A stretch of DNA of 64,000 bases from Macrostomum lignano (GCA_002269645.1 NIVC01001174.1:75087-139086); one strand, 5' to 3'. Shown: positions 15,476 to 64,000, counted from the first letter of the stretch. Numbers and translations are program-made. Notes: a model not told the origin generated them from the letters alone.

Positions 15476-15479
15476 GGCG

Positions 15480-16540: not shown

Positions 16541-16637
16541 AGATGAATGAAGATTTCATTCCATGAGAGATAGGTAAGATTTCACTACCTAATCCATGAG
16601 ATGTTCCGAAATCTCAGCCGTCCAATTCTCTCCGCAG

Positions 16638-23076: not shown

Positions 23077-26000
23077 TTAAACTTCGGTAACGACGCACTG
23101 CACAACCGCCTGTGCAGCCTGCACGGCCAGTACCGCCTTCTCCCGATTCGAACTCTCCGACAGATCCAACGCCCGACCGTTGCGCTCGTCCACGAAGGCG
23201 CTCGCCAGCTGTGAGACGTGATCCAACACGGTCTGCGTCAGATCGGTGTCCGAAATGCAGCACAGATGCTGGCTCAGCTGCTGTTGACGATCCACTGCTT
23301 TACCCTGCTTTGTCAGCAACGCCTTCAGCGCCTTCTCCGCTGCCTGCCAGCTGATGAAGCTGGCCCATTCGAACTCGCCCGCTTCGATCCATCGCTCTGC
23401 TGAGCGCAGTTTTGTCTCTGCAGTTTCCAGGCACTTTTCTGCACTGTCGGCAGAAGCTCGGCCAGCACTGGAGCCTTCGGAGAAGTGCAGCCCGCCGCCT
23501 GCGACGCCTCCGCCGTGGCGTCTCAACCAACTGATGACGACCTCTTCAGCAGTGAATATGAGGCGACACCTGGCTACTCGCTCAGCCTGCTTCTGCCAAT
23601 CGTTAATGAACTCATGGAATTGGTGAGTCCAGTTGTGCTCAGCAGCGAATGATTTTATCTGTTCAAATGAATTAGCAGTACTTGAGTAGTGAGTCAGAGT
23701 CCGTTGCAGTACTTGACGCTGCTTGTCGGTCGGCAGCGAAGCTGCACTGCTCAACAGATGGTCAATGGACGCTCTGACATCAGTGTTTCCATGTGGAACC
23801 GATGAATAAACTGAAGCTGGTTGGTTCTCGAGTAAGAACAGCTCAGCTGTCGTGGCTTTGACGTGAGCACTTTCGCCAGCGTCAATGATGTACTCACTGG
23901 TCCATGGATTCTCGACTTCAACAGGGAGCTTCTCTAGCACTTTGGCGTACACAAAGCATCCGTACTTATCCTTGTAAGCCACAGTTTTGCTCACTAGGTC
24001 TATCGGCTTTGCTGGCAGATGCCTGAGCAGGCAGTTTTTAAGCTGTGGCAAAGCCTGGCCAATCAAGGAAGCGCCCATGGTACTTAGCTCCATGCTCTTC
24101 TGACTCTTCACTTTGTGCAGAGAAACTTTACGCTTTTCCAAAACTTTCAGCATACCTTCGGGACTGTCCATCAGAAGCACAATTGTCAAATGATTTCCAT
24201 GCTCCGGTGATATTTTGAAGCCATTCTGTAAAACTTTCTGAACGATATCCACAAAGTCCATCTGCCAAAGCATTCCCTTACTACCGCTGAGGTGTTCAGG
24301 GATGGCTGCATGGCTCATAAGAATCTTCCGTCCTTGCAGCAGAAAGTTCTTGTCTTCAGCTGAGTCGCGTTGCTCGACACCGTCAAACTGCAGGCAGGTC
24401 CGCAGCTCCGACAGGCAGACAACCGAAAATCGGGACAGAAGAGAAGAGAGAGAAGCAAAAACTTCATCACCTTTGACGGATAAGTCTTTCGAATTGTGCA
24501 AAATGATGCTAGTGATGCACTGGAGCAGCACTGGGTGCCTCAGCTTAGCTTGAAGATTGCATCGGGCTGCACAGTTTTCCCCAGCGCTGCACCGATCGCT
24601 GACCTCCGTCAGCAGCTTCTCGCTCACATTCTCGCTCAGTCCTTTGAGCCCCAAGTCGGCTGCGAGGCTGAAGTACAGCCTGCGCAAACTGTCACTACCC
24701 AGCTCGCAGAAGCTGAGATCGAGAAATTTGACACACTTAGATTCCGCTAGCCTCTTCTGGTAGCCGTCCGAGTCGTTGATTGTGAGCTTCTGGCAGTCCA
24801 CCAGCTCGAACTCGGTATCTATTGCGTCCTGGAAGTCGTCAGGTAGCACCAGTTTAGTAGGTAGGAATAGCCTTTTTGTGGACTCAAATTTCAGCTTTCC
24901 GCCTTGTTCTAATAAACCGATCATTGTGGTCAGGCATCGGTGCACGGAAGTAAGCTGATTTTCAGTTAGATAATATTGCTGATGCTGTTCGTCGTGAATG
25001 AGCTCCAGGACCAGCCTCAGTTGCTCCAATGTTGCTGATTTGGTGGCGCCCAACTTAGTAAACAGATTTAAATGACATCTGAAATCACCTGGACAGACCT
25101 GGATGTACGGTGGCACCGAGGTTTTTTCTTCGAATGTGATTCTGTTTGGGGTGACGAAGCACGGGTCCCATCTAGGGCCTGTGAAAATGCAAGGAATTTT
25201 TCTCAAACGTGCAATCACATTTCCCATTTTGGCACTGTTCATCCTCGTCAGATGTTCATAAATAGAGCTCATGGTCTTGAGCCTTAAACTCGCAGCAGTG
25301 TCGTGCATTCTAGATGAAGTGAATGCTTCGTTGGACAAAATGTTCTGCAAATGACGCTCAAAAGCCTCATCGGAAACAGTCTTCATGGACTTATTCAAGC
25401 AAGGTCCGCAGTCAAGACAAGCGTACGACTCAACAGTCCAACAAAGGTAACGTGAGCTAAATTTTACGCACTGGGAGGGACTTTTCATGCAAACAGCATC
25501 GCCTGGACAAAGACTGTGTAGGTCCTTGTCGTCATTCGCTACTAAAAATGGAATCTGAGATAGTTTCTGGACAAATTTATCTGTTAGATGCGTCCGAAAG
25601 CCCACACTGTCGATAAATTTCAGCAGCATTTTCGATCTGTTTTTAAGATCATCAGAAATGCCAACAGTCCCTTCCGTGCTGATGTCATTGGCAAACTTAA
25701 TAACAGTATCAGCTGAGCACTCAGTAATTAAGCCAGCATGGAGCATCAGCTGTCTCCAACGGCCACACTGGAACCGCTCTGGAAGAAAGTTTTCTGAATC
25801 CAAAGTTTTTTCGAATATAAATACCGTGTGATCATAAAACGCATTAACCCTCTTCCAGCCGCATTGTGTCGGAATGATACTTGCTTCCTGTAGAGAGCTT
25901 TCGAGTTTCCTTAAGTTTTGAGATTCATCTGATTTCATAAACGGAATTCGATCAAAGTTTCTGCTCATTTCGCAGAGTTTCTCTAAATGCTTCTCTCGAG

Positions 26001-29000
26001 TTGGGTCGGACAATTTAGAGAAGGCAGGAAGGATGAAGTTTGCGTAGACTTCAGGTTCCGATATTTCATCGCATTTTAGTTTACTGTACAGTGATCTGAG
26101 TGCGGTGTTGTCCTTCAGGAAGATGGCCTGGCTGGAGCTCTTCCACTCGTCCATCTCGTCGGCAACGAGCGTCGCCGGCAAGATGCAGGCCTGCTCACAG
26201 TTGAGCGCTCGGCAGTGACCGTCAGAAGTGACGAACACGGGCCACTTTCGCAACCGTTCCAGAATGTTTTTCTCGCCTTGATTTTCACTTAGCTGCCGCC
26301 AATGATTTTGAATGTACTGGAGAAAGATCACAGCTTCCTCTTCCGTAGCTGAAGTTCTTTCGGGATTTTCAGTCAGAGCGAATTCAATCACTCGAAGCAT
26401 TGACTCGTGCCTCTGGAAGTTGCCGCATAGTTTTTCAACAAGCTTTAGGCTGGACATACTAAGCATTGGAGCATTCAGCTTCCGAAGAGACTTCTCGACG
26501 GCTAAGCTGTAGTCATCGAGACCATCAACTTGGACGACAGGCGCGTAAACACACGAGGCCCGTGATATGCTAACTAGACGATGCTCATTGACAGGAACCA
26601 GATGAGCATTTTTGAGCCCGGCAGACACTAGAGAATGCAGCGGATCTTTTTGATTCGGGCAGCTGAGATTGAAAAAGTCCCACGCTCGAATGAGCCAATT
26701 TTCCAGAGCCTCTGTGTCCATGCCAACCTGGTGCATGGGCGCGTAAATGCTTTCTGCACTGAAGATTTCACTGTTTTCTTTTCGCAATATGTTGCAGAAG
26801 TCCGTCACTTGAAAGTCTCTCACAATATTAAACGTTTTTAGTTTGTCAATCTCAGCTTTGGAAAGACAAGAAATGAATGTTTTGTGCACAAACTCTTGCC
26901 TAGCTTCTGTGTGCATAAACAAGTCGAAATATTCCGTAAAGAAGAGTCCTTTGTCTCCGGATTAAAAAAATGACAGCTGTCCTCCAGAACTTAAATTTAG
27001 AGGCGCTCCATTCAAATTAGTCGACTTTGTTTCCAACAAATACTTGATAAACTTCAAGACGGTTTCAGGACGCTCGAAAGGAGTCTGCTCTACATCTACA
27101 GGTACAGAGGCTCGCAATGCTGCACAGACTGGGCCGTTGAGAAACGCAATGATTGATGAAGCATCCGCGAGCAGGAAGGAATCCAGTTTGCTGGACCTCA
27201 GCGATTCTACCAGTTGCCGTTTTTCGGACAAAACGAGCGGGAACTTCAATTTGTAAAGAATCTGCTTTATTGGATCTTTTAGATCGCCTGCAGCGAGAAA
27301 TACAGCAGTCCCATCGACTTCGCTCAAGCGCTGTGCAAGTGGAAGCCACTTCAAAGTCTGCGGCTGCTCACTTGTAGCTGGAAATATTTTCAGTCGGTTT
27401 CTAAACGCATTCTGGAAAAAGGCCTTTGCAAGCTCGTCAAAGAATGCCATGTCTTTTTCATGACAATCTGGGAGAAGCTTAAAATACTCAGGCACACTGG
27501 ATTCAGTTAATACAAAGGTCCTTGCTGTTTCTAGAATACTTCCATAGCATTCAGGTAGCAGCTGCGTTGCCAACATGCGGTTCCATTGTTCCTTATAGTC
27601 AGAATTTCCGCTCGCTTTCCAAAGAGATCTTCGCGACGGGTCCAGAATGAAGTGACCGTTTACGTGAACAGGCAGCCCAGTGGTCACTGGCAGTGGAAGC
27701 AGGCAGTAGGCACGGCCCTTCACTGCCGATGTTGCTGCTGATCCAGGCAAAAGAGCGGCTACTCCGGTCTTTGGAAGAAGACCCCACTTTCCTGTAAATA
27801 CTTCCTGTTGCACTTTTTCTGTGACAGTGATGTTTCTACTGCTCAACTTTTGACAAACAAGCCACCTTGCTTTTGAGTCCACAGATTTCCCCGTACAAGT
27901 TGTGGTGAGCTCATAAGTTACTGAGCTGATTGGAAGAGCATCAAGCCTGATTCCTTTAGTCATTAAACTTTGACTGGCCACTTCGCATTTATTCTTGAAA
28001 TCGTCCAAGCCTTCTTTAGAATCTGGCAGCCTGTCTGCTTGGACTCTTACGGTGTAGAGCGTATTGAGAACGCCGTCCTGCGATACTTCACCAAGCTTTA
28101 CCTCCTTGACATTAACCAGAAACAAAACTGCTTGTTCCAGTTCTTCTTTTGCCAACTGCTCATCAAATAGCGTCTTGATTTCGTTTGCATCCACAACCTT
28201 TTGGCAAATCTTTGATTGATTTGAAAACCTCAGTGGTAGACGGAAAACAGTACCTCCTTTCTGCTGCAAATGTTCTGGAAGGTATCCAGCAAATACATCC
28301 GTAAATGTATCTTTCAGATTCTCCAACTCCTTGAACATTCCTCCAGGAGTAGCGGCCGTCGCACCAGGCATGTATTTGCAGTGCGGATCCATCACACACA
28401 GTACTTTGCCGTCAGAAAGAAATGACGGCGCGTCAGTAATATTGTACACACAGTTGAACCCAATTCCGTAATTCCCTGCTTTCCACAACTCGTCACGCTT
28501 GGATCCAACGCCGAGATCCTGGATGCCTTCAATGTCAGCATCGGAGAATGTCGAGTCGTTATAGACGAGTAGCGCAGGTCCCTGTAGCTCCTTCCAGTTG
28601 TCGCTCAAAACTCGTTCGGTTCCGTGATGCCGATGATCGATGATGAAGCTGATCGTCGATGCTCCCGCGTCATCAGCATTCTGGATGAGTTCTTTGAAGA
28701 GTTCGCTGCCGAATGGATAGCCAGCCAGAATGCTCTTCAGTCTAGTTGTGAGATCCTCATGCTGACCAAATGGCAGCGGCCTCATCGCCTGCGATATCAT
28801 GCTCTCGCGCTGGCTCCGGATGCCAAGCTTTTCGCACAGATCGAATGACAAAGTTTGGTGACAGAAGTAAGTGCCATCTGCTAGCTGGACAATGTCCATC
28901 CATGGAATATTATTGAAGCATAGCTGGCTACATGGCCTCAAGACGCCAGTCTTATCTGGGGCGAGAAGTTCGTTCTTATGTTGGAATTTCTCTGTAGAGT

Positions 29001-31956
29001 TCACAATTTTATAAAGTAGACCCAAGCTTAGTTCTAAATCATCATCTGACAGACGTGTTGATGCGCGTTGCTGTGCCAAATTTCCGAGAGCCCACACAAA
29101 ATGCTTGGTTTTAAATTTGGTTAGAACTCCTGCTGCCTTGAAGAAGAGCATGAATGCTTCGTCGATCAACTCTGGTGAGAGCTTAAACAAGAACGGCGGA
29201 AAATCAGTGTCTAATTTCCACATTGATACCTGAGTCGGCCTTCGGAATCCATGAGGTGACCAGATTACGTTGGGTACCTGCTTTATCAGGTTAGTCACAT
29301 CTGGTTGGGTAATGCCCTTTTCAGAAAGCTTTCGACTAAAATATCTGTAGACGCACTGACTGACTCTGAGTGTTTCTTCATTGGTCTGTCTCGTATTAAT
29401 TACTGTGACTAATTGCTGCCACGTAACTAGACGCGTGACATTATTCAAGACACCTATCGACTTCATTAGCTCTATTCTTACGCTTTTTTCAACTTCGCTG
29501 AAAAGGGATTCATCTATAACCAACTGTGACGCTGACACCAAATCTTTGCAATTTGGAGTGTACAGCTTGTCTGGCTGGAACAGTGCACCTGGTAGATATT
29601 TATCGGACTGCCAATTAAAGCAGCAGTCTTGTGGTTTCCGCATAGCAGGTAGAAACTCAACACTTTTAAGTTGCTCGAACGGATGCCGAAATTTCCTATT
29701 AAGAAGCGACCCTAAGTAAGACAGCAATACCTTTGTTCGCTCCTCTCTGTGTGGCTCAGCCAGGACAGTAAGCGACGCTGCTCGACGCATCACTTCCGCC
29801 CACAGTAAGTCATTGCGCATGCCGATCAGCCGTAGAGCCTTCAGCCGGTCCTCTGTCCTGAGGTCGCTGTGCGGAAATATCGGATCTTCAGAATCAAAAA
29901 GACGCGCGGCGAGACACTTTTGATCCAGAATTTCGGACGGCTTACACAATGCATTATTGGCATTCGGAATGCAGCAGTACTTTTTTAGAGCATTATTAAC
30001 CATTTCTGTCACAGTCTTTGACGCTGACTTCAACTCTCTGCGCTCATCTTGGCAGATTTCATCCAGAATGAACTTTAGTGCTCCGAAGCAGTCCTCAGAG
30101 TAGCCCGACTTCCACAAACGAGACATGTTCGTCACCAAAATAACAAGCAAAGTTTCGGCCGACCACTGATGCTGCAGAATCTTGTTCGTCAGTCCCAGCT
30201 GCTCCACAGTTCGTCGAACTCCATCGGTCAACGATGCTACACCTTCGTGCTGACCCACGAGTCTTGTGGCGAGTCGACTCAAACAATCTGAAATCCCACC
30301 CAGTGACAGGATGCTGGGATCCAGAAACACTGTGTGTCCGAAACTCTTCCAGCTGGCTGATGTGTGAAAGATTGGTGCCTGGCCGTCAAGCAGGGAAGCG
30401 TAGAACTTCTCAATGAGAGGCCTCCACACAGAATGAGTAGCTCTGTCGAATCGAGGCCACAGCTCTTGCGAAATCTCTGCATTCACCAAAGACATTCCGC
30501 TTAGAATCTTCAGAGCGTCGATGTAGGCAGGACAAATGACGTCAGTGAGCAGCACTCGGTTCCACTCGCCGAGACTCCACACGCCCTGCTTCTCGTCGAC
30601 CGTGACCTCGTTGAGGTGTCGTCGGCTCGAGGTGACGGAGAAGCTCGCGTTCAGCATCACTGGAAATGGATTTTCTACAGGCAGCGGTAGGAAGCAGAAC
30701 AGCAGCGAGGCCGGCTGTGTGTCACGTGACAGCGGCACAATCCTGTGAGACTGCTCGATGGGCAGCGCCACGGCTCCCACAGGCGCCAGTCCGAGACGAC
30801 GCTGCTCCAACGCGACAGCGAGCGACTGCCCAGTGGCGACAGCAGCGCACACGAGCCACACTCTGGTGGAGGCGACTGTGCTGATCTGGAACTGGTCATG
30901 AGCTGAGTCTCCAAGCTGAACCTCTACCTCGACAGTCGCTTGACAGCGATGTGCTTGATTTCGTCCAGACCCTCCTTGAGTAGCAGATTCGATCAGAGCT
31001 TCGGCTACCTTGAGAATGGAGCTCTGAGCAGCGAACTCTTGATCCGCTTGTGACATTCCTGATATTGGTAGCGGTGGCAGTGCAATGGCATGTCGCTGGA
31101 AATATTTGAGAGGGCTCTTGTGAACGCAGAACACGAGTTGAGTTTGATTTGAAGGATCGGTCGCATTGGACGGCAGGAACAGACACCGGAATGTTCGCAC
31201 TGTCTGGGTGAACAGAAGCATAGTGTCGGCTTGCTCTGCAGCCAGTCTTAGTAACCCGCCAATCTCCGAGTCAGAGTACACGCGATCGCAGATCTTCGAC
31301 TTCGCTGCCTGAGCCTCAGTGCGCAGCGGAAGACGCAGCAGCGTGCCGGCGAAGTTTCCTTCATCTGCTTGCAGATTGCAGCCTGAGACTCCAGCGAACG
31401 GTGCAAACTGGTTGGCGTACCGATCCAGCAGACTCGGCTGTGCTTGAAAGTCGAGCTCAACTCCAGTGTCCCTGTCCCCATGACTCGCGTACACCGCCTC
31501 CAAGTAGCCCTCGCCCCTGCGCTCACCGTGCGGGTCGAGAATCAGCATGCGGTGCCGACTGAGGATCTGCGGCACGTCAGTCAGGTTGTACACCGAGTTG
31601 AAGCCCAGACCGAAGCGACCGACCTTGGCCGTCTTCTCCAGTTTGGTGGCTCCGCTCAGCTGCAGGATGTTGTCGAAGTCCTCGTCGCTGAAGGTGGCGT
31701 TGTTGAAGGCCCACAGCGCCCGTCCCTGACAGTCGGCCATCGCCGGATCGAGCAGCGACTCGGAGCCGCGCCAGTCGGAGTTCTCGCGACAGTCGTAGAG
31801 CAGCGTGACCTCGGTGGCACCCGCGTCGTCAGCGTTCTGCAGCAGCTCCTTGGGCACCGCCAGACCGTCAGAGTACTCGTCGAGCAGTCGCTTGAGTCGT
31901 CGGGTAAGCAGCTCAGACTGGCCGCGCAGACGTAGGCCGTCGGAGGCCTGGGCCAT
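23077..31956 (-). CDS. SACS: Sacsin-like protein copy A (2 GHKL/Hsp90-like repeats + degenerate J segment + HEPN), intronless, about 2960 codons, interrupted by one in-frame TAA at 26964-26962
   Basis: ORFs 26962-32037 and 23077-26922 are in the same frame. Sacsin-repeat motifs occur twice (GQxExLTxRLK..KELLQNADDAGA..GRFGLGFNSVY; FGQHEDLTTRLK..KELIQNADDAGA..GNYGIGFNCVY). C-terminal HEPN (WASFISWQAAEKALKALL). ATG at 31956 follows a splice acceptor at 31994. Confidence 0.9.
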
Positions 31957-32036
31957 TTTGGAGGCCTGTGTGTAGGGTTTTGAGAGGCTTGAACTGTGAT
32001 TGAAGTACATGAGAATGCGTGACTTGCACGCATGCA

Positions 32037-32083
32037 TGACTGACTGACTGACTGACTGACTGACTGACTGACTGACTGACTGA
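32037..32083. repeat. (GACT)n microsatellite in the 5' intron of sacsin copy A
   Basis: Seen directly; same position as the 1.1-kb array in copy B. Confidence 0.95.
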
Positions 32084-37007: not shown

Positions 37008-37196
37008 TGTAACGCGAGGTATTTGGCAGTGTAGAAAACTCAACGAAGGCCCCGTGGGGCAGTGATGGCTATTTTATGCGAGTCAATGATGTACATACTG
37101 AGAGCGAACGTACATTACAATTATTCAGCAAAATATTTGTCAATACGATATCAGTTCAAGAATTCTGCCAATAAGGCGAGGAATAAAACAATTAAA
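37008..37196 (-). repeat. 3' LTR of Gypsy element
   Basis: About 95% identical to 40172-40361; adjacent minus-strand polypurine tract GGGGAGGAGAAA at 37208-37197. Confidence 0.92.
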
Positions 37197-37431
37197 TTTC
37201 TCCTCCCCGAAACAAGTTTAAAAAACGGAGGAAATTAAAACACGTCAGCAATGAATCCTAAAATTGAAACGCAGAACCTTTTAAAAAGCATGCATTCATG
37301 GTCTCTGACAGCCCATCAGTGCTCACACCAAAGAAGTCCGGAGGCCGTCGCTCCCGCTCCGGGTACCGCCGCTCGGCCTGGCTGGGCTCCGGCGCAAACT
37401 GGTAGGTCACCGGCTGCTGGCGGAGCTGGTC

Positions 37432-38547: not shown

Positions 38548-38722
38548 CTTCCGCCAGTTGCGGCTGAGGTGTCGCAGTCCGCTGTCCGACCATCTTGGCG
38601 GAGTCGTGCTGTCGTTCTCCAGTGCATCGATGACCAGCTTGAGCTTCGGATCAGCTTGTTCACCTCGGGCTCCCAGTGCACCGGCAGCTTCCTTGGCGAG
38701 GTCCGCACCGGGACATCGTCGA

Positions 38723-39346: not shown

Positions 39347-39360
39347 GCTGGGGCCCGTGC

Positions 39361-40170: not shown

Positions 40171-40171
40171 T

Positions 40172-40361
40172 TGTAACGCGCGGTATTTGGCAGTGTAGAA
40201 AAATCAACGAAGGTCCCGTGGGGCAGTGATGGCTATATTTATGCGAGTCAACGATGTACATACTGAGAGCGAACGTGCATTACAATTATTTAGCAAAATA
40301 TTTGTCAATACGATATCAGTTCAAGAATTCTGCCAATAAGGCGAGGAATAAAACCATTACA
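40172..40361 (-). repeat. 5' LTR of Gypsy element
   Basis: TG...CA termini, 190 bp. Confidence 0.92.
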
Positions 40362-49200: not shown

Positions 49201-52153
49201 CCGATCTGATCGAGTATTTTAAGGCTCAAATCTAAATCGCCAAGCGTTAGTGGTTCCGAGGAGTAACGCTGAGAAAGAAGTTTAAGCACACCTGCATAGT
49301 GCGATGCTGTGAACTTTTGATTGACTCCGGCTGCCTTGAAGAAGCTGTCGCACTGGATGCCGCTTAGTTCGGAAGGCAAAACATGAAGAAATGGCTCGAA
49401 TCCCGCATCAGATCTCGACAGACTTACTTGAGCAGACCTTATGAATCCTTTCGGGGACCAAATAATGTTCGGAGTCTGTTTCACCATGCTAAGGACGCTA
49501 TTCGCATTGAGATAACCGGAAGAGATTTGGGCACTGAGGTGTCGATAAACGCACCGACTCACTCGCAGAGTTTCTTCATTGCCAGCTCGGGTCAGAGCTA
49601 CCAGCTGCTGCCAAGCCACCTCATTGGCAACGTAACTCACGTTCAAAACTCCGATTTGAGCCAAAAGATCTTGTCTCCTTGATGAGGCAACATCACGCAG
49701 CACCGTTTCGTCCAAAATAAGCTGCGATGCGGATACAAGATCTTTGCAGCTGGCATCAAACAGCTGACTAGGCTGGAAAAGTTGCGTTTTTGGATACTGA
49801 TCAGCTCGCCAGACAAGGCAACTGTCGTTAGCTTTCTTCAAGGCAGGTAGAAATGCTACGTTTCTCAGCTGACCAATCGGCTGGTTTGAAAACCGAGAAC
49901 GGAACGAATCCAAGTACGAAAGCAGCAACACCGTGCGCTCGGTTCTCTGAGGCTCGGAGAGCGCAGCAACTGACTGGGCGCGACTCAGCAACTCGGCCCA
50001 ACTGAGATCCGCGCGGAGCCCGACTGAGCGGAGCGCTCTCAGCCGATCCGGTGTCTGCATGTCCTTGTGAGGAAACACGCTTACGTTCATTTCGAACAGC
50101 CTCGCAGCCTGACAGCTGGTGTCCAGAAGCTGTAGAGGCTGACACAGGGCGTTTCCAACGTTAGGAATGCAGCAGGACTGCTTTAACAAATTTAAAACGT
50201 TTTGAGTTACAATTCTAGAAGCGGAGCTCCAGTCTGCATTGCCTCCACCACTGATAACATCCAGCATGAATTTCAGCACTCTAAAGCAGTCCTCAGAGTA
50301 GCCTGACTGCCACAGGCGAGACATGTTCGGCACCAACTTAAGCAGCAGTGTCTCGCCCGACCATTGACGCTGCAGAATCTTGTTCGTCAGACCCAGCTGC
50401 TCCACAGTTCCTCGAACTCCATCGGTCAACGATGCGACACCTTCGTGCTGACCCACGAGTCTCGTGGCGAGTCGACTCAAACAATCTGAAATCCCAGCCA
50501 GTGACAGGATGCTGGGATCCAGAAACACTGTGTGACCAAAACTCTTCCACCCAGCTGATGTGTGAAAGATTGGCGCCTGACCGTCAAGCATGGAAGCGTA
50601 GAACTTCTCAATAAGCGGCCTCCACACAGACTGAGTAGCTCTGTCGAATCGAGGCCACAGCTCTTGCGAAATCTCTGCATTCACCAAAGAGATTCCACTT
50701 AGAATCTTCAGAGCGTCAATGTAGGCAGGACAAATGACGTCTGTGAGCAGCACTCGGTTCCACTCGCCGAGACTCCACACGCCCTGCTTCTCGTCGACCG
50801 TGACCTCGTTGAGGTGTCGTCGGCTCGAGGTGACGGAGAAGCTCGCGTTCAGCATCACTGGGAATGGATTTTCGACAGGCAGCGGTAGGAAGCAGAACAG
50901 CAGCGAGGCCGGCTGTGTGTCACGTGAAAGAGGCACGATCCTGTGAGACTGCTCGACGGGCAGCGCCACAGCTCCCACAGGCGCCAGTCCGAGACGACGC
51001 TGCTCCAACGCGACAGCGAGCGACTGCCCAGTACCGACAGCAGCGCATACGAGCCACACTCTGGTGGAGGCGACTGTGCTGATCTGGAACTGATCTTGAG
51101 TTGAGTCTCCAAGATGAACCTCAACCCCGACAGTCGCTTGACAGCGATGTGCTTGATTTTGTCCTGGCCGTCCTTGAGTAGCAGATTCGATCAGAGCTTC
51201 GGCTACCTTGAGAATAGAGCTCTGAGCAGCGAACTCTTGATCCGCTTGTGACATTCCTGATATTGGTAGCGGTGGCAGTGCAATGGCATGTCGCTGGAAA
51301 TATTTGAGAGGGCTCTTGTGAACGCAGAACACGAGTTGAGTTTGATTTGAAGGATCGGTCGCATTGGACGGCAGGAACAGACACCGGAATGTTCGCACTG
51401 TCTGGGTGAACAGAAGCATAGCATCGGCTTGCTCTGCAGTGAGTCTCAACAAGCCACGAATCTCCGAGTCAGAGTACACGCGATCGCAGATCTTCGACTT
51501 CGCTGCCTGAGCCTCAGTGCGTAGCGGAAGACGCAGCAGCGTGCCGGCGAAGTTTCCTTCATCTGCTTGCAGATTGCAGCCTGAGACCCCAGCGAACGGT
51601 GCAAACTGGTTGGCGTACCGATCCAGCAGACTCGGCTGTGCTTAAAAGTCGAGCTCAACTCCAGTGTCCCTGTCCCGTGACTCGCGTACACCGCCTCCAA
51701 GTAGCCCTCGCCCCTGCGCTCACCGTGCGGGTCGAGGATCAGCATTCGGTGCCGACTGAGGATCTGCGGCACGTCAGTCAGGTTGTACACCGAGTTGAAG
51801 CCCAGACCGAAGCGACCGACCTTGGCCGTCTTCTCCAGCTTGGTGGCTCCGCTCAGCTTCAGGATGTTGTCGAAGTCCTCGTCGCTGAAGGTGGCGTTGT
51901 TGAAGGCCCACAGCGTCCGTCCCTGACAGTCGGCCATCGCCGGATCGAGCAGCGACTCGGAGCCGCGCCAGTCGGAGTTCTCGCGACAGTCGTAGAGCAG
52001 CGTGACCTCGGTGGCGCCCGCGTCGTAAGCGTTCTGCAGCAGCTCCTTGGGCACCGCCAGACCGTCAGAGTACTCGTCGAGCAGTCGTTTGAGTCGTCGG
52101 GTGAACGGCTCAGACTGGCCGCGCAGACGCAGGCCGTCGGAGGTCTGGGCCAT
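43221..52153 (-). CDS. SACS: Sacsin-like protein copy B (2 GHKL repeats + degenerate J + HEPN), about 2980 codons once frame breaks near 51665, 48555 and 47270 are corrected
   Basis: ORF pieces 51446-52153, 48501-51479, 47207-48565 and 43221-47234 tile one sacsin-like protein colinear with copy A. Breaks fall in short homopolymers. An in-frame TAA upstream of the ATG supports 52153 as the start. Confidence 0.88.
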
Positions 52154-52248
52154 TCTGGAGGCCTGTGTGTAGGATTTTTAAGGGGCTTGAACTGTGATTG
52201 AAGTACATGAAAATGCATGACTTGCATGAGTTGCTTACATGGCAGACA

Positions 52249-53376
52249 GACTGACTGACTGACTGACTGACTGACTGACTGACTGACTGACTGACTGACT
52301 GACTGACTGACTGACTGACTGACTGACTGACTGACTGACTGACTGACTGACTGACTGACTGACTGACTGACTGACTGACTGACTGACTGACTGACTGACT
52401 GACTGACTGACTGACTGACTGACTGACTGACTGACTGACTGACTGACTGACTGACTGACTGACTGACTGACTGACTGACTGACTGACTGACTGACTGACT
52501 GACTGACTGACTGACTGACTGACTGACTGACTGACTGACTGACTGACTGACTGACTGACTGACTGACTGACTGACTGACTGACTGACTGACTGACTGACT
52601 GACTGACTGACTGACTGACTGACTGACTGACTGACTGACTGACTGACTGACTGACTGACTGACTGACTGACTGACTGACTGACTGACTGACTGACTGACT
52701 GACTGACTGACTGACTGACTGACTGACTGACTGACTGACTGACTGACTGACTGACTGACTGACTGACTGACTGACTGTGACTGACTGACTGACTGACTGA
52801 CTGACTGACTGACTGACTGACTGACTGACTGACTGACTGACTGACTGACTGACTGACTGACTGACTGACTGACTGACTGACTGACTGACTGACTGACTGA
52901 CTGACTGACTGACTGACTGACTGACTGACTGACTGACTGACTGACTGACTGACTGACTGACTGACTGACTGACTGACTGACTGACTGACTGACTGACTGA
53001 CTGACTGACTGACTGACTGACTGACTGACTGACTGACTGACTGACTGACTGACTGACTGACTGACTGACTGACTGACTGACTGACTGACTGACTGACTGA
53101 CTGACTGACTGACTGACTGACTGACTGACTGACTGACTGACTGACTGACTGACTGACTGACTGACTGACTGACTGACTGACTGACTGACTGACTGACTGA
53201 CTGACTGACTGACTGACTGACTGACTGACTGACTGACTGACTGACTGACTGACTGACTGACTGACTGACTGACTGACTGACTGACTGACTGACTGACTGA
53301 CTGACTGACTGACTGACTGACTGACTGACTGACTGACTGACTGACTGACTGACTGACTGACTGACTGACTGACTGA
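52249..53376. repeat. (GACT)n microsatellite, about 1.13 kb, in the 5' intron of sacsin copy B
   Basis: Seen directly; one interruption near 52777. Confidence 0.98.
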
Positions 53377-58061: not shown

Positions 58062-58305
58062 ACACTGCGGTGACACTGCTGTCTCACTGTGGAAACTCTG
58101 CATGCTGTCTCACTGCGGTAACTCTGCTGTCTCACTGCGGTAACTCTGCATGCTGTCTCACTGCGGTAACTCTGCTGTCTCACTGCGGTAACTCTGCTGT
58201 CTCACTGCGGTAACTCTGCTGTCTCACTGCGGTAACTCTGCTGTCTCAATGCGGTAACTCTGCTGTCTCACTGCGGTAACTCTGCTGTCTCACTGCGGTA
58301 ACTCT
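58062..58305. repeat. 22-bp satellite (GCTGTCTCACTGCGGTAACTCT)n, about 10 units; paralog of 40362-41115
   Basis: Seen directly; same upstream unique flank as 36815-37007. Confidence 0.95.
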
Positions 58306-59318: not shown

Positions 59319-62300
59319 TCATTCGGCAAACTCGGACGAGACGCACCGTTCGACGCCCTCCGCTCCCTGCAGAGCCCGCGCCGCCTGCTCCGCTCCGAAG
59401 ACCTCAGTCGGAACCCGCGGTCGGCTGCGGTCGCTCGGGTACCGACAGTCGTCCACCATGGCGCCCGCCAGGTCGGCAACGTGACCAGCCAGGCTGCTCT
59501 GCAGGTCGCTGCTCGAGACGCAGCTCAGATGCTGGCTCAGCTGGTGGCTGCGCTCGATGGGCTGACCCTGTCTCAGCAGCAACGCCTTGAGTGCCTTCTC
59601 AGTAGCCTGCCAGCTGATGTAGCAGGCCCAGTTGTACTCTCCGGCCTCAGCCAATCGGGATGCCGAGCGAACGTCGTGCCGCGCCGTCTTCAGGTACCTC
59701 GCAGCATCGTCAGGCGACGTTTGGCAAAGTTTGCGCCGCCTGAACTGCAGTAATAACTGCCAGACCGGCCAGGGTAGCGGAAAGCGCCGCCGCTACCGCC
59801 GGCACCGCTGCTCCAGCCTCCTCCTCCGTAGCTTCTTGATCGCATGGTGACGACAACTTCCTCTGCGATGAGAATCTGTCGTACCTGGTAACCCGAGCTG
59901 TCTGCTCTCGCCATCCACCAATGCACTGATCGAACTGTCGGGTCCATACATGATTAGCAGCGCGAGTTCGTATCTGGTTGAATGACTCATCCGAGTTCGA
60001 GTAGTGAGCCAGTATGCGCTGAAAAATCTGATGCTGCTGCTTTGTCGGCAGGGAAGCTGCGCTGCTCAGCAGATGATCCACCGTTGTTGCAACGTCCTCA
60101 CCATTATTTTGGTTAGCTTGGGCGAAAGACCGCTCTTCAAAGGAGAAAAGCGCAGACATTGAAACTCTTAGTTTTGAGCCTCCACCGAATTCAATAGTAA
60201 ACTCGCTAGTCCACGGGTTATCGCTGCCACCAGGGTGTCTTTCCACTACCCGAGCGTAAACAAGTCTTCCATCGCCATTTCTGTAAGCCACAATTGGTTC
60301 ACAATGTCCCTTGGTCTATCGGCAGTTGCTTCAGTAGACACTGCTCAAACTCCGGTACAGGTTCACCGAGCATTGAGTCATCGGTTGCGCTTGGCTCTGC
60401 AAAATGCTGCTCACTGGTCTGGTGCAGTGCAATTCCTAGTCCGTGCAGAACGGCTAGCATGCTGTCTGGACTGTCCATAAGAAGCACCTGAATTAAACAA
60501 CTTTTCTGCTCTGGCAAAATGTTGACACCGTTATTCAAAACCTGCATTATAATTTTGATAAATTCCATCTGCCACAGCTGCCTTCGGTCACCGCTCATCT
60601 CGTCCGGAATCGTAGAGTGATTCATGAGAATCCGCTGCCCATCCAGAAAGAAGTTCTTGTCCTGCCCCGAGTCCTGCTGCTCGACACCATCCAGAAGCAG
60701 GCACGTACGCAACTCGGAAAGACACACAACGAGAAGCGAGATATCAGAGATTTCACTGCAGCCAGTCGCTCGTCTCCTTTGCCAGAAAGATCCTTGTTGC
60801 CATGCAGCATGATGCTTACGATGCACAGGTGCAGCACTGGGTGGCTCAACTTAGCTTGCAGACCGAGTAGGGACTCACAGCGCTCACCATCGCTGCACAA
60901 CTTATTGGTGTCTGAAAGCAGCCTCTCGCTTACGTTGTCGCTCAGTTTCTTCAGGCCCATGTCGGCTGCGAGATGAAAGTACAGCCTCTGAAGCTTGTCA
61001 GTGCCCAGCTTGCAGAAGCTCAGATCAAGGAACTCTACATCCTGTGCGTCCACCAATCGATTGTTGTGCACCTCTGAGTCGTTGATGGTCAGACACCTGC
61101 AGTCTACCAGTTCGAAAGCGGCTTCCGTGCTGCTGTCTTGATGCTGACTTCTTTTAGGCAGGAAGAGCACTCTGTCGGACTGGAACTGGAGCCTGCCCCC
61201 CGCTCCAGCAGCACTATGATACTCGATAGACAGTGCGAAACTGAGTTCAGCTGCTCTGCACGAAGCGAGCCTTGCTGCTCATTCTGAATCAGTTCCAATG
61301 CAAGTCGAAGTTGCTCGATTGTGGCAGACTTTGTAGCTCCCAGTTTTGCAAACAGCTTGCGGAACTGTGAAAATTCTTGAGGACACTCGTAGATGTAAGG
61401 CAGAATAGCAGAGTTTTTATCGTGAGTAATTCTGCTAGCTGATATAAAAAATGATTTACATGTATAGCCTTCGGTTTTGATTAGCACACACGGAATATCT
61501 TTCAGAAATTTAATTGACTGAAATGCCGTAAAAAGCATAATGGTACTCAGCCTTGAGTACACGGAATTCATGACATGACTTCTCAGTGCTGCAACTTCGC
61601 TTCGAAGATCAGCTGACGTGAAGGTCGCTGCAGAGAAAAGGTTGACAACGTGGCGCAGAAAAATGGCATCAGAAACTGGCATCGCTGAGTTTGCAAAGCA
61701 GCTGCCCTGGCCAACACAGCTCGGTCCGTAGGGCACGGCCGTCCAGCAGAGGAAGCGAGCCTCGAACAGGGCGCACTGGGACAGACTCGCCATTCGAAGT
61801 CGTTCGCTCTGACAAAGCCTCTGAAGAGCGCCGTCGCTGTTGGCTACAATAAATTGAATTCCTGCCAGTTGTCGGACTACATGTTCGGTTATCTCTTTGC
61901 GGAATTTATAGCTGTCGATAAACTTGATCAGAGCTTCCGATTTCTTAGATAATTCATCTGTGATACCACTGGCTCCTTCTGTTTGCAGCTCACTGGCGAA
62001 GCTGATGGCAATTGCGGCCGTGCATTCCAAGATTAGACCGGAAAATTTCATCAGCGTTCTCCATCGCTCTTCATTGTACGGCGTTGGCAAGAAAAATTGT
62101 GGCTGAAGTAGCTTCTGAAAAATGTTTACTCTGCTATCATAAAACGTGTTGACGCTCCGCCATTGTCCGTCAAACGGAATGAGTTTGGCTGTGCTGAGAG
62201 ACTGACTGAGCATTTGAAACTTGTCAGGGTCCTCCACTTGAACTCTTTCGAACTTCCAGCTCAGCTTTAGAAGTTTTTCGAGATGCTTTTTCGAGTGTTG

Positions 62301-64000
62301 TCGGTGAATTTGGAGAACAATGGCAGGATAAACCTGGCATAAACCTCAAGCTCTGCCATCTCGTCGCATTGAAGCTTTTCGTACAGCATCGTGAGAGACC
62401 AGTTTGCCTTCAAGAAGATGACCCGGCTGGAGCTCTTCCACTCGTCCATCTCGTCGGCCACGAGCGATGCCGGCAAGATGCAGGCCTGTTCAGAGTTGAG
62501 AGCGCAGCAACGACCGTCAGAATGTGACAAACACCGGTAATTGACGCACTCTTGCAAGGAGGTTCTGCTCTCCCATTCTCTTACTTAGCTCTCCCCAGTT
62601 GCTCTGAATGTACACCAAAAAGCTCACAGCTTGCTTCTCAGTGGTCGCAGATCTCTCAGCGTTCTCATTTAGAGCGAACTCCATCACTCTCAGCATGGAC
62701 TCGGGCTGTCTGACGTTGCCACACAGACTGCCGACCAGCTTCAAGCCCATCCTGCTGAGCGAGGGAGCGTTGAGCTGCTGCAGAGACTCCTCGACTGCTT
62801 TGCTGCAGTCATCGAGACCGAATCTGATTGGCTCATAAATACAGGGCGCCAGTGAGAGGCTTGCAAAGCGAGACTGGCTGACAGGAATCAGTGTGCGCTG
62901 CCCAGTCCTGAAGAGGATAACGTTTGCATTGGTGCATTCTTATTAGTGCATTTGTTGTCTAGAAACTCCCACACTCGATTCAACCATTGTTCGAGAAACT
63001 CGGCTTCAGTACTAAACTCCCAATTCGATACGTAGTCAGTACGAGACATGCAGACTGCGGCATGCTCTCTGTGCAAAAGAGTGCGAAAATCCATCAGCTG
63101 AAACTTTTTACACAACTGTCCCTGGCATAGATTGATTTTCTTCTTCAGATCGAGCTGAAGTGAAACTTTCTTGTGCACAAACTCGTGCTTTGCTTCGCTG
63201 TGTGAAAACAAGTCGTGGAATTGAGTGAGAAACAGAGGCGTCGATCCATTGCCAAACTCAGTGAGTCGGTTACCGGCTCCTAAATTCAAGGCACTCCGAT
63301 GAGATGCTGCACCTCGTCTTGTAGTTCATCAAGCAGATATGCGAGCAGGCTTCAACGGCTTCTGGGGTTTGAAATGATGTCGCGCTCACATCACTCGGCA
63401 ACGAATCTCGAAGTCGCTTGCACGCTGGACCCCTGAGAAATGCGCAAATGGACACAGCATCAGCCAAAGGGGTGAATTCCAGCTGGCTCGACTCAAGCGA
63501 CTGACGAAGGCCTATATAATCCGGGACCATGATGGGAAATCGCAGTTTACTCAGAACGTTCTGAAGATACTCGGTCAAATTGTTCGGAGTCAGGAATGCA
63601 GCACTACCGCTGACATCACCTGAGCTCTGTGCTAGCGGCAACCACTTCTGCTGTTTTTCAAGTACAGAGTGCACAGGGAAGATTGCCCACCGAAATCGAA
63701 AGGCGTTTTGGAAGACAAGCTTTGCAAGCTGGCCCCACAGCGTCTGATTGCTTGCGTGGTACTCTGGAAGAAGGCTGTAGAAGTGGTGTACGCTCTGCAC
63801 ATTCGGATAAACTGCTTTTGCTGCTTCGAGTAGACTGCCGTAGCAGTCAGGCAGAAGCTGAGTGGCCAGCACTTGGTTCCATTGCTCCTTGACATCTACA
63901 GCTCCATCGCCTTCCACAGAGATCTGCGCGATGGGTCCATAATGAAGTGACCATTCACGTGTACAGGAAGTGCAGTCGTCACAGGCAATGGCAGCAGACA
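59319..64000 (-). pseudogene. SACS: Sacsin-like copy C, 3' half (runs off the window), near-identical to copy B but with many 1-bp indels
   Basis: Colinear with B 43221-47910. HEPN intact at 59319-59700. Frame breaks near 59720, 59880, 60315, 60730, 61195, 62290, 62520, 62890, 63290 and 63348 are real decay or sequencing error. Confidence 0.8.

What the first reader, a model, noticed from the sequence alone, without database searches (positions are those of the whole stretch)
23077..64000. Tandem array of truncated sacsin-like GHKL-ATPase + HEPN genes: candidate innate-defence gene cluster
Seen: at least three head-to-tail copies spaced about 16-20 kb apart. A and B are each a single coding exon of about 8.9 kb starting directly at a sacsin repeat, with two GHKL modules and a terminal HEPN. 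Known: human sacsin is single-copy with UBL + 3 repeats + J + HEPN. From memory, the two modules match repeats 2 and 3, so UBL and repeat 1 are absent. GHKL ATPases and HEPN domains recur in biological-conflict systems. Inference: tandem expansion, strong A-vs-B divergence, sequence exchange and a TE-rich setting fit a rapidly evolving ATPase-gated effector family rather than the neuronal chaperone role.
Basis: partly seen in the sequence, partly recalled or inferred. Interest (0 to 1): 0.82.

Follow-up and report, generated by a model that had tools for sequence, protein, structure and literature searches.

The report
Tandem sacsin-like ATPase–HEPN genes, flatworm
This stretch of the flatworm Macrostomum lignano genome holds three head-to-tail copies of a giant "sacsin-like" gene (two Hsp90-type ATPase modules plus an RNase-type HEPN domain). 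The family is common in invertebrates and related to a bacterial anti-phage protein, but every copy here carries at least one reading-frame lesion and an immune role is still only a hypothesis.

Summary
**Verdict.**
- The window is M. lignano contig NIVC01001174.1.
- It carries three minus-strand, head-to-tail sacsin-like copies: A 23077-31956, B 43221-52153, and C 59319 to beyond 64000. Stop-to-stop spacing is 20.1 and 16.1 kb.
- Each copy has two SACS/GHKL modules and a C-terminal HEPN. There is no UBL and no J domain.

**Corrections.**
- None of the three is an intact ORF here. A has one in-frame TAA, B has four 1-bp deletions, and C has about ten.
- A sister contig carries an intact 2,991-codon B copy, and the assembly is PacBio/Canu. 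Real decay and consensus error therefore cannot be separated.
- A and B are ancient lineages (dS saturated, omega about 0.18), not fast-diverging duplicates. Recent B-type copies give omega 0.30-0.41.
- Gene conversion is real: a 2-kb 5' tract and a mosaic pattern among B-type copies.
- B-type HEPN keeps the predicted catalytic residues. A's HEPN has lost them.

**New support for a defence link.** Each roughly 1,000-aa sacsin repeat unit is homologous to TmtA of the bacterial Tiamat anti-phage system. Oyster and fish sacsin(-like) genes are poly(I:C)-induced.

**Overall.** This is a new member of a known, widespread family, and the defence role is plausible but unproven.

The parts
23077..31956 (-). 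Copy A (A-type sacsin-like gene). About 8.9 kb in a single frame, from the annotated ATG (MAQASDG...) to the stop.
   Evidence: ORFs 26962-32037 and 23077-26922 lie in the same frame. GenBank model BOX15_Mlig004621g1 (P0005) covers 31956-27918 and is identical for 1336 aa.
26962..26964 (-). In-frame TAA that interrupts copy A (codon 1692 counted from 32037). It aligns to a Gly in B.
   Evidence: tca ttt ttt TAA tcc. The downstream 1,294 codons stay open; the chance of this in random sequence is about 1e-27.
31183..31896 (-). A, GHKL/Hsp90-like ATPase module 1 (SACS domain). Motifs KELLQNADDAGA and GRFGLGFNSVY are intact.
   Evidence: Pfam SACS. PDB sacsin SRR1 entries 5V44/5V47, E about 4e-38. 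Aligns full-length to sacsin SRR2.
28075..28761 (-). A, GHKL/Hsp90-like ATPase module 2 (SACS domain).
   Evidence: Pfam SACS best stretch aa 1093-1321. Aligns full-length to sacsin SRR3. TmtA PDLC03965 best stretch 1090-1494.
23095..23442 (-). A, C-terminal HEPN domain, degenerate. The alternative His is replaced (RQQQL) and the RYP(D) arginine motif is missing.
   Evidence: Pfam HEPN E=2.1e-11. TM0613 1O3U E=1.5e-5. Alignments.
43221..52153 (-). Copy B (B-type). Same architecture as A, broken by four 1-bp deletions at about 51677, 48560, 48545 and 47275. Module 1 motif reads QNAYDAG (D to Y).
   Evidence: Sister-contig copy B' (L083 9977-18949) is an intact 2,991-codon frame.
43245..43601 (-). 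B, HEPN domain with Ex3K (EKALK), the alternative His (SHQL) and the Arg motif (CRYPSD) all retained.
   Evidence: Pfam HEPN E=8e-16. Alignment. AlphaFold model pLDDT 80.8; its best PDB folds are 1O3U, 1UFB and human sacsin HEPN 3O10.
59319..64000 (-). Copy C (B-type), 3' 4.7 kb only, cut by the window end. It has about ten 1-bp deletions relative to B and shares B's deletion at the 47275-equivalent site.
30060..32083 (-). 5' gene-conversion (or chimeric) tract of A. It is 94.6% identical to B 50258-52286 and GC-rich (57%).
   Evidence: dS 0.12 here against about 2.3 downstream. GC content. About 95.5% identity to B' and B'' as well.
50258..52286 (-). Partner of the conversion tract in B.
37008..40366 (-). 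LTR-retroelement remnant inserted in the A-B spacer. Has 195-bp LTRs, gag zinc knuckle, aspartyl protease and integrase, but no RT. It accounts for much of the 20-kb versus 16-kb spacing.
   Evidence: LTRs 37008-37201 and 40172-40366 are 94.9% identical. Pfam hits.
52245..53376 (.). (GACT)n microsatellite of about 283 units, immediately upstream of B's start.
   Evidence: Also present at this position in the sister contig.
40364..41115 (.). 22-bp minisatellite in the 3' flank of B. A shorter counterpart lies at 58063-58305 in the 3' flank of C, so it is part of the duplicated unit.

Best explanation
**What it is (shown).**
- This is a tandem cluster of paralogous 'sacsin-like' genes in Macrostomum lignano. 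The architecture is SRR2-like unit, SRR3-like unit, then HEPN, with no UBL, no SRR1 and no J domain.
- The cluster evolves by birth-and-death and gene conversion.
- Two old lineages sit side by side. A-type and B-type have saturated dS and long-term omega of about 0.18.
- The 5' 2 kb of A and B has been homogenised. B-type copies (B, C, and B', C', B'' on other contigs) exchange tracts and evolve at omega of about 0.30-0.41.
- In this contig every copy carries single-base ORF lesions. The sister contig keeps an intact B-type ORF.

**How the protein likely works (inferred from homology).**
- Each roughly 1,000-aa repeat unit starts with a Bergerat-fold (Hsp90/GHKL) ATPase. The unit is homologous along most of its length to the bacterial anti-phage protein TmtA (Tiamat).
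- ATP binding and hydrolysis in the two units probably drives a conformational or oligomeric switch.
- The switch is coupled to a C-terminal HEPN-T domain.
- In B-type proteins the HEPN keeps the predicted active-site set (Ex3K, alternative His, Arg), so it could be a metal-independent RNase.
- In A-type proteins that set is lost, so the domain is at most a nucleotide/RNA-binding or dimerisation module.

**Most likely biological role (inference by analogy, about 35-40%).** An inducible stress or antiviral response, as reported for oyster and fish paralogues, rather than sacsin's Hsp70-linked co-chaperone role.
For: - **Organism and contig:**
- **Architecture:** Pfam. No DnaJ by Pfam or by a sacsin-J HMM that finds vertebrate sacsin at 1.6e-22.
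- **Correspondence to SRR2 and SRR3:**
- **Family breadth:** 620 word-index hits, including two- or three-module sacsin-like proteins of about 2,700-2,950 aa in molluscs, echinoderms, cnidarians, hemichordates and brachiopods. A separate search of 1.84 billion cluster representatives, seeded with a vertebrate UBL+SRR1 fragment (P0125), gave 5,318 hits.
- **TmtA homology:**
- **HEPN residues and fold:**
- **Selection and conversion:**
- **Intact sister copy:**
- **Transcript-derived gene model over A-specific sequence:**
- **Immune-type expression of paralogues elsewhere:** PMC7064767, PMC11357929, PMC9437489, PMC6208414.
Against: - There are no expression, infection or biochemical data for the flatworm genes, and no paper on Macrostomum sacsin.
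- All three copies in the window are disrupted.
- The HEPN of A lacks the conserved residues.
- Pairwise omega values are well below 1.
- M. lignano is a neopolyploid with 180-312 Mb of duplicated sequence, so multiple copies are not in themselves special.
- TmtA homology shows shared ancestry of the ATPase unit, not shared function. None of 79 bacterial loci combined it with a HEPN.
- Tiamat's own mechanism is not known to me.
Confidence: 0.55

Rival explanations
1. Decaying redundant copy of the cluster. After the recent genome doubling of M. lignano, this contig's array is being pseudogenised (nonsense codon in A, frameshifts in B and C). The sister subgenome or haplotype keeps the working genes, and the locus in the window does nothing.
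For: - Every copy has at least one lesion.
- The deletion at 47275 is shared by B and C, so it is not an independent random error.
- B has D to Y in the near-invariant QNA[DE]DA motif.
- Sister-contig B' is intact.
- The assembly holds 180-312 Mb of duplicated sequence.
Against: - All lesions are single-base events and all are 'deletions in this contig'.
- B and C differ by only 14 substitutions but 9 one-base indels over 4,116 nt. That ratio is far too high for natural decay and typical of long-read consensus error in repeats.
- REAPR rated only 64% of assembly bases error-free.
- A keeps 1,294 open codons after its stop.
- B vs B' omega is 0.38, not about 1.
Confidence: 0.35
2. One reading: these are active ATP-gated HEPN RNase effectors of innate immunity under an arms race.
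For: - TmtA (Tiamat) homology.
- B-type HEPN keeps Ex3K, the alternative His and the Arg.
- Tandem multigene organisation with conversion.
- Coding regions are more diverged than flanks between sister contigs: 1.8-4.3% against 0.6-0.8%.
- Sacsin is listed among poly(I:C)-induced antiviral multigene families in oyster, and sacs-like is induced in lumpfish.
Against: - No positive selection shows at gene level (omega 0.18-0.41).
- The HEPN of A is degenerate.
- The copies in the window are disrupted.
- There are no functional data in flatworms.
- The excess coding divergence can also come from paralogue conversion or chimeric consensus.
Confidence: 0.25
3. Proteostasis paralogue: a sacsin-like chaperone or cytoskeleton-organising protein with no immune role. 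Its copy number simply reflects polyploidy and segmental duplication.
For: - Colinear homology to sacsin 1493-4092 over about 2,500 aa.
- ATPase motifs are intact in A.
- Long-term purifying selection.
- The genome is highly duplicated.
Against: - The J domain (HPD), which links sacsin to Hsp70, is absent, as is the UBL. Most three-module invertebrate sacsins in the sample keep HPD.
- Several divergent subfamilies exist in one genome.
- Paralogues in other animals respond to viral mimics in the opposite direction to bona fide sacs.
Confidence: 0.3
4. Assembly artefact: B and C are one gene duplicated by mis-assembly of a repeat-rich PacBio contig.
For: - B and C are 99.7% identical over 4.1 kb.
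- The assembly is known to be error-prone and redundant.
Against: - The 3' ends of B and C differ by 3-8% and their spacers differ.
- An independently assembled contig (NIVC01003517.1) shows the same C'-spacer-B' order with distinct sequences.
- A is far too different from B to be an artefact.
Confidence: 0.07

Closest known systems
Vertebrate sacsin (SACS, the ARSACS protein; representative P0150, 4,599 aa)
   Same: - A giant ORF without introns.
- Hsp90-like GHKL modules within repeat units of about 1,000-1,500 aa. A aa 34-2549 is colinear with sacsin 1493-4092 (SRR2 + SRR3) at 26% identity, 693 bits.
- A C-terminal HEPN of the same fold (3O10, TM about 0.7).
   Different: - No UBL, no SRR1 and no J domain/HPD.
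- The HEPN sequence is closer to prokaryotic HEPN-T (TM0613) than to the human sacsin HEPN.
- Multi-copy and tandem rather than single-copy.
Invertebrate 'sacsin-like' proteins of about 2,700-2,950 aa (e.g. Dendronephthya gigantea P0093/P0110, Mytilus, Dreissena, Acanthaster, Lingula)
   Same: - 28-34% identity, covering 59-98% of A's N-terminal half (87-98% for the Dendronephthya and Acanthaster proteins).
- Dendronephthya P0093 and P0110 have two SACS modules, a C-terminal HEPN and no HPD.
- Tandem fragments and retroelements are seen at another such locus (L002).
   Different: - Only 28-34% identical.
- P0041 (Mytilus), P0044 (Dreissena), P0068 (Acanthaster) and P0102 (Lingula) have three GHKL motifs, not two, and none of them gave a HEPN hit.
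- The flatworm has its own A-type and B-type lineages and further subfamilies (P0007-P0013).
TmtA of the bacterial Tiamat anti-phage system (PADLOC PDLC03965 etc.; example Microcoleus L004 7881-12599, 1,573 aa)
   Same: - The sacsin-type GHKL domain plus about 700 further residues are homologous. A 1090-2066 aligns to TmtA 37-991 at E=5e-61, and sacsin SRR3 aligns to TmtA 34-1060 at E=3e-69.
- Pfam calls the TmtA N-terminus a 'Sacsin domain'.
- Bacteria also have 2-3-module versions of 2,250-2,800 aa.
   Different: - TmtA is a prokaryotic single-gene system.
- Its C-terminal third is not matched.
- No HEPN was found in any of 79 bacterial loci.
- A preprint reports a PD-(D/E)XK fold in Tiamat instead.
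- A defence phenotype has not been shown for any animal homologue.
HEPN-T family (PF05168; TM0613 1O3U, TT1696 1UFB, AF0298 2HSB)
   Same: - Sequence and fold match.
- B-type keeps the Ex3K, the alternative His between helices 2 and 3, and the Arg at the end of helix 3. Anantharaman et al. 2013 describe these for this family.
   Different: - Here the domain is fused to two giant ATPase units, instead of being stand-alone or paired with a nucleotidyltransferase.
- The A-type copy lacks both the His and the Arg motif.

Membership tests
Sacsin orthologue (SACS) | N-terminal ubiquitin-like domain | tested here: not met
   No PF00240 hit. The frame opens only about 40 aa before the first GHKL motif and is closed upstream. 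P0125 and P0150 do carry the UBL.
Sacsin orthologue (SACS) | Three sacsin repeat regions (SRR1-3) | tested here: not met
   There are two QNADDA modules. They align full-length to SRR2 and SRR3 and only partially to SRR1.
Sacsin orthologue (SACS) | J domain with HPD motif upstream of the HEPN | tested here: not met
   No DnaJ in Pfam. A sacsin-J HMM finds P0150 at 1.6e-22 but nothing in A, B' or P0001/P0003 even at E<=10.
Sacsin orthologue (SACS) | C-terminal HEPN domain | tested here: met
   Pfam HEPN in A, B and C. The B model matches 3O10 with TM about 0.7.
Invertebrate two-module sacsin-like proteins | 2 x SACS/GHKL + HEPN, about 2,800-3,000 aa, no UBL or J, homologous along the whole length | tested here: met
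   B' 2,982 aa: SACS x2 + HEPN; P0093 and P0110 lack HPD.
GHKL (Bergerat-fold) ATPase | N-box (E-x3-N-A-x-D) and glycine-rich G2 box (G-x-F-G-x-G-F) | tested here: met
   Both modules of A have KELLQNADDAGA or KELIQNADDAGA, and GRFGLGFNSVY or GNYGIGFNCVY. B module 1 has QNAYDAG.
GHKL (Bergerat-fold) ATPase | ATP binding and hydrolysis | not testable with these tools
   Needs a biochemical assay.
HEPN-T RNase | HEPN fold | tested here: met
   Pfam. AlphaFold pLDDT 80.8, with top folds 1O3U, 1UFB, 3O10, 2HSB and 1WOL.
HEPN-T RNase | Predicted active site: Ex3[KR], Arg of the Rx4-6H position, and the alternative His (PMC3710099) | tested here: inconclusive
   B-type has EKALK, SHQL and CRYPSD, so all three are present. 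A-type has EKALK only, with His replaced by Gln and the RYP segment missing. Activity was not assayed.
Tiamat (TmtA) anti-phage system | Match to TmtA profile models | tested here: met
   PDLC03965 E=2.5e-103 with two stretches. The C-terminal half hits PDLC03969 positions 911-1106.
Tiamat (TmtA) anti-phage system | Full-length TmtA architecture (one unit of about 1,300-1,700 aa including its C-terminal region) | tested here: not met
   Only TmtA residues 37-991 of 1,573 align. The flatworm protein has two units plus a HEPN. A genuine TmtA scores 839 bits full-length.
Tiamat (TmtA) anti-phage system | Prokaryotic gene that confers phage resistance | not testable with these tools
   This is a eukaryotic gene and no phenotype data exist.
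Animal innate-immune multigene cluster (operational criteria) | Tandem paralogues with birth-and-death evolution and gene conversion | tested here: met
Animal innate-immune multigene cluster (operational criteria) | Elevated dN/dS or positive selection | tested here: inconclusive
   Pairwise NG86 omega is 0.18 (A-B, dS saturated) and 0.30-0.41 among B-type copies. Site models were not possible with five mosaic copies.
Animal innate-immune multigene cluster (operational criteria) | Induction by infection or effect on resistance | not testable with these tools
   Only analogies exist: oyster and lumpfish.

The most novel reading that the evidence does not exclude
Animal sacsin-like SRR-HEPN proteins, and by descent the repeat units of the human ataxia protein sacsin, are eukaryotic relatives of the bacterial Tiamat (TmtA) anti-phage ATPase. 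On this reading the intact B-type flatworm copies act as ATP-gated HEPN RNases in antiviral or anti-transposon defence. That would make this one more bacterial immune module conserved in animals. No paper in the searchable library links Tiamat and sacsin.
Probability: 0.2. Interest if true: 0.75.

Novelty: new member of a known kind. Interest (0 to 1): 0.4.

Why it matters
The locus itself is one more instance of a widespread, automatically annotated 'sacsin-like' family, sitting in a highly duplicated genome.

Three things make it worth a modest follow-up.
- **A link to bacterial defence.** The sacsin repeat unit is homologous over about 1,000 residues to the bacterial anti-phage protein TmtA. 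I could not find this link stated in the searchable literature. It bears on the unknown function of sacsin and of Tiamat.
- **A tractable model.** M. lignano supports RNAi and transgenesis. It has both a B-type copy with a complete HEPN motif set and an A-type copy that lost it, which is a natural contrast for testing whether the HEPN is an RNase gated by the ATPase units.
- **A caution on reading assemblies.** Raw long-read assemblies can make multigene families look like intact genes, or like pseudogenes, depending on consensus errors.

Tried and rejected
- **Exact look-up of A's 1,691-aa ORF:** not on record. The organism came from the homology search instead.
- **Degenerate J domain idea:** by eye, A 'RQVLQRTLTHYSS' looked like 'RRLYLKWHPDKN'. 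A sacsin-J HMM found nothing in A, B' or the paralogues, so the idea was rejected.
- **First bacterial scan with a single protein:** found nothing because non-conserved peptides were chosen. An alignment-based rescan worked.
- **Best 'bacterial' hit L003 (57% identity, 'Nitrospirales MAG'):** rejected as a bacterial homologue. It is a 4,240-aa sacsin-type ORF with no other ORF of 150 aa or more in 16 kb, so it looks like eukaryotic contamination.
- **ENA hits on megabase contigs:** they looked as if they might be bacterial, but the one locus I inspected (L002, P0025) is eukaryote-like, with sparse ORFs and RVT_1. I took the rest to be eukaryotic on that basis.
- **Third word-index search seeded with a human SRR1 fragment:** returned only short fragments. 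Full-length sacsin was obtained through the representative search instead.
- **HEPN next to or fused with bacterial sacsin/TmtA-like genes:** none in 79 loci.
- **tRNA scan of the window:** nothing.
- **Literature on Macrostomum + sacsin or Tiamat + sacsin:** nothing relevant.
- **A second B-C dN/dS estimate:** noisier than that because of frame-boundary codons in C. I rely on the intact pairs.

Full report
**Identity of the window.**
- The N-terminal ORF of copy A is 100% identical to GenBank protein BOX15_Mlig004621g1 of Macrostomum lignano (P0005).
- The contig carrying that protein is NIVC01001174.1 of assembly GCA_002269645.1 (Mlig_3_7). It matches window 17918-41956 base for base.
- The window is therefore nuclear DNA of a free-living flatworm.
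- Mlig_3_7 was built from PacBio reads with Canu and polished with Pilon. REAPR rated 63.95% of its bases error-free. It contains 180-312 Mb of duplicated sequence, 21% LTR retrotransposons and 15% simple or tandem repeats. Its GenBank gene models are derived from a genome-guided transcriptome (PMC5730564).

**The observation.**
- All sacsin-like sequence lies on the minus strand. tblastn with copy A finds three colinear copies and nothing in 1-23000.
- A spans 23077-32037, with the annotated ATG at 31956. B spans 43221-52153. C runs from 59319 to the window end.
- Stop-to-stop distances are 20,144 and 16,098 bp.
- Part of the difference is a 3.4-kb LTR-element remnant at 37008-40366. It has 195-bp LTRs that are 94.9% identical, plus gag zinc knuckle, protease and integrase, but no RT.
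- The A-B and B-C spacers share colinear weak similarity, including a 22-bp minisatellite. Whole units, not just genes, were therefore duplicated.
- Pfam finds two SACS domains and a terminal HEPN in A, the same parts in the pieces of B, and a HEPN in C.

- A is interrupted by an in-frame TAA at 26962-26964, directly after a T7 run. The 1,294 codons after it stay open, which has a chance probability of about 1e-27. The stop is therefore either very recent or an error.
- B has four 1-bp deletions relative to its relatives, at about 51677, 48560, 48545 and 47275.
- C has about ten 1-bp deletions relative to B. B and C share the deletion at 47275.

**A sister contig changes the reading of these lesions.**
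- Protein P0006 led to contig NIVC01003517.1 (L083). It carries the same C'-spacer-B' arrangement and is 96-99% identical to window 40364-62160.
- Its B' is an uninterrupted frame of 2,991 codons with two SACS domains and a HEPN. Its C' is open for the 953 codons held in the locus.
- A third copy, B'' on NIVC01001564.1 (L084), is open for 2,675 codons.
- Every lesion in the window is a single-base event.
- Over 4,116 nt, B and C differ by 14 substitutions but 9 one-base indels, 8 of them deletions in C. That ratio is far from what natural decay gives and is typical of long-read consensus error in repeats.
- On the other hand, the deletion shared by B and C, and a D-to-Y change in B's near-invariant QNA[DE]DA motif, fit real decay.
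- I cannot separate the two with the data at hand.
- The independent recurrence of the array on a second contig argues against B and C being an assembly duplication.

**Architecture relative to sacsin.**
- A full-length vertebrate-type sacsin (P0150, 4,599 aa) was recovered. It has a UBL, three QNA[DE]DA modules at 172, 1526 and 2586, an HPD at 4364 and a HEPN.
- BLASTP aligns A 34-2549 colinearly to sacsin 1493-4092 (693 bits).
- Unit by unit, A module 1 aligns full-length to SRR2 (352 bits) and only partly to SRR1 (183) or SRR3 (151). A module 2 aligns full-length to SRR3 (358 bits, against 196 and 166).
- There is no UBL.
- There is no J domain. Pfam finds none, and an HMM built from the HPD-containing regions of the sampled sacsin-family proteins detects P0150 at 1.6e-22 but nothing in A, B' or the other flatworm proteins.
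- Most three-module sacsin-family proteins in the sample keep HPD, whereas the two-module cnidarian proteins also lack it.
- These genes are thus not sacsin orthologues. They are members of the 'sacsin-like' group.
- That group is common: 28-34% identical relatives of about 2,700-2,950 aa occur in molluscs, echinoderms, cnidarians, hemichordates and brachiopods. Some have two GHKL motifs and some three.
- M. lignano itself has further, 37%-identical subfamilies (P0007-P0013, P0040).

**Evolutionary regime.**

| Comparison | Codons | dN | dS | omega |
|---|---|---|---|---|
| A vs B, 5' tract | 1-660 | 0.028 | 0.125 | not quoted |
| A vs B, rest | 700-2986 | 0.40 | about 2.3 (saturated) | about 0.18 |
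| B' vs B'' | 2,981 | 0.040 | 0.120 | 0.33 |

- The values use codon alignments and the Nei-Gojobori method.
- The strong A-B divergence is an old split under purifying selection, not rapid evolution. The 5' 2 kb has been homogenised.
- That tract is also GC-rich (57% against about 46.5% further into A), as expected for biased gene conversion.
- B' vs B gives omega 0.38, and the pairs B'-C' and B''-C' give 0.30-0.41. This is moderately relaxed but clearly not neutral or positive overall.
- A 400-column mismatch profile among B, B', B'', C and C' is mosaic. B-C is 0-0.8% over 4 kb and then 8%. B-B' is 0.2-0.5% in the middle and 4-5% near the 3' end.
- Between the two sister contigs the intergenic DNA is 99.2-99.4% identical, while coding DNA differs by 1.8-4.3%.
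- Both patterns indicate frequent exchange among paralogues, with the caveat that chimeric consensus could mimic it.

**The HEPN domain.**
- A's and B's C-termini match Pfam HEPN (E=2e-11 and 8e-16) and TM0613/TT1696 in the PDB.
- An AlphaFold model of B's last 150 aa (pLDDT 80.8) finds TM0613, TT1696, human sacsin HEPN 3O10, AF0298 and ST0689 as its best folds.
- Anantharaman et al. 2013 describe the HEPN-T family as follows: the His of Rx4-6H is often replaced, an alternative conserved His lies between helices 2 and 3, and an Ex3[KR] lies in helix 2 (PMC3710099).
- In an alignment of 27 sacsin-family HEPN domains from the two searches, plus vertebrate sacsin and two prokaryotic HEPN fragments, these elements appear as EKALK, 's-H-x-L' and 'm-R-Y-P-D'.
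- B-type sequences have all three (EKALK, SHQL, CRYPSD).
- A has EKALK but RQQQL in place of the His, and it lacks the RYP segment.
- A catalytic RNase is thus plausible for B-type proteins but not for A.

**Link to bacterial defence.**
- PADLOC's models for TmtA, the single protein of the Tiamat anti-phage system, hit A's N-terminal half at E=2.5e-103 in two stretches. They hit its C-terminal half at profile positions 911-1106.
- NCBIfam's 'sacsin N-terminal ATP-binding-like' model also matches.
- An alignment-guided scan of one genome per prokaryotic species found 286 loci with this domain.
- A Microcoleus ORF of 1,573 aa scores 839 bits full-length against TmtA and 257 bits against Pfam's 'Sacsin domain'.
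- BLASTP aligns A 1090-2066 to its residues 37-991 (E=5e-61), and sacsin SRR3 to 34-1060 (E=3e-69).
- The sacsin repeat unit and TmtA are therefore homologous over about 1,000 residues.
- Bacteria also have two- and three-module versions of 2,250-2,800 aa. None of the 79 loci examined had a HEPN.
- I found no paper in the searchable library that links Tiamat with sacsin. One preprint reports a PD-(D/E)XK fold in Tiamat.
- This is shared ancestry of an ATPase unit joined to a nuclease-type domain. It is not evidence of immune function in the flatworm.

**What is already published on the defence idea.**
- Anantharaman et al. proposed in 2013 that sacsin-like HEPN proteins take part in host-pathogen conflict, noting fusions to DEATH domains in a sponge.
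- In the Pacific oyster, sacsin is listed among poly(I:C)-induced multigene families and antiviral effectors (PMC7064767).
- A sacsin-like gene lies in the top-FST region for herpesvirus resistance in oyster (PMC9437489).
- In lumpfish, poly(I:C) induces sacs-like while repressing sacs (PMC11357929).
- Nothing is published for Macrostomum.

**Verdict.**
- It is a new member of a known and widespread family. It lies in a genome where duplication and repeats are the rule, and in this contig no copy is intact.
- The defence interpretation is plausible and somewhat strengthened by the TmtA homology. It is neither new as an idea nor tested.
- The 'rapid evolution' part is not supported at gene level.
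- The transcript-derived gene model over A-specific sequence (31956-27918) argues against 'untranscribed', though multi-mapping reads in the 5' tract are a caveat.

Noticed in passing
L003:1329-14051 (CBDBCZ010000016.1, 'Nitrospirales bacterium' MAG in the GTDB genome set): A 4,240-aa sacsin-type ORF, 57% identical in the GHKL domain, with no other ORF of 150 aa or more in 16 kb. It looks like a eukaryotic (host?) contig mis-binned into a bacterial MAG.
   Followed up: partly
window 52975-58305 vs 43221-52153 and 59319-62160, compared with L083: Between the two sister contigs the spacers are 99.2-99.4% identical, but the coding regions differ by 1.8% (B/B') and 4.3% (C/C'), with a mosaic profile. 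Either non-allelic gene conversion is frequent or the consensus is chimeric in repeats.
   Followed up: partly
window 30001-32000 and 50001-52000: The converted 5' tract is markedly GC-rich (56-57%, against about 46.5% in the rest of A). This fits GC-biased gene conversion. It also produces long antisense ORFs (31444-31935+, 51599-52201+) that are probably meaningless.
   Followed up: no
window 27918-27940 (end of GenBank model BOX15_Mlig004621g1): The public gene model follows A's ORF for 1,336 aa, then uses a 10-nt 'intron' that shifts the frame and ends it after 6 more residues. This is an annotation artefact that hides the remaining about 1,600 codons.
   Followed up: yes
window 3-1564 (+): Remnants of a P-element/THAP9-like transposase (TNP-like RNase H N-terminal and GTP-binding insertion domains), followed by a (GACT)61 microsatellite at 1699-1942.
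   Followed up: partly
window 5469-6293 and 7656-8591 (-): Two ORFs with ankyrin repeats, probably exons of an unrelated neighbouring gene.
   Followed up: no
window 13532-16543: A block of minisatellites with units of 21 bp, a G-rich 20 bp, 58/119 bp and 30 bp. The G-rich array at 14843-15747 causes the GC-skew spike (+0.32) at 14-16 kb.
   Followed up: no
window 52245-53376: A 1.1-kb (GACT)n microsatellite starts about 90 bp upstream of B's start codon and is also present in the sister contig. It reads as a long SQSV-repeat ORF in the ORF list.
   Followed up: no
L037:7830-16214, L074:7857-15119 and about 28 other bacterial loci: Many bacteria (Verrucomicrobia, Nitrospira, Sphingomonas, Burkholderiales and others) encode giant proteins of 2,250-2,800 aa with two or three sacsin/TmtA-type GHKL modules. 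Tandem repetition of the unit is therefore not a eukaryotic invention.
   Followed up: partly
L002:7062-8033 and 10001-16825 (ENA metagenome contig): Another sacsin-like locus in an unidentified eukaryote, with a SACS fragment just upstream of a 2,274-aa gene and reverse-transcriptase ORFs on both sides. The setting is similar: tandem and repeat-rich.
   Followed up: no
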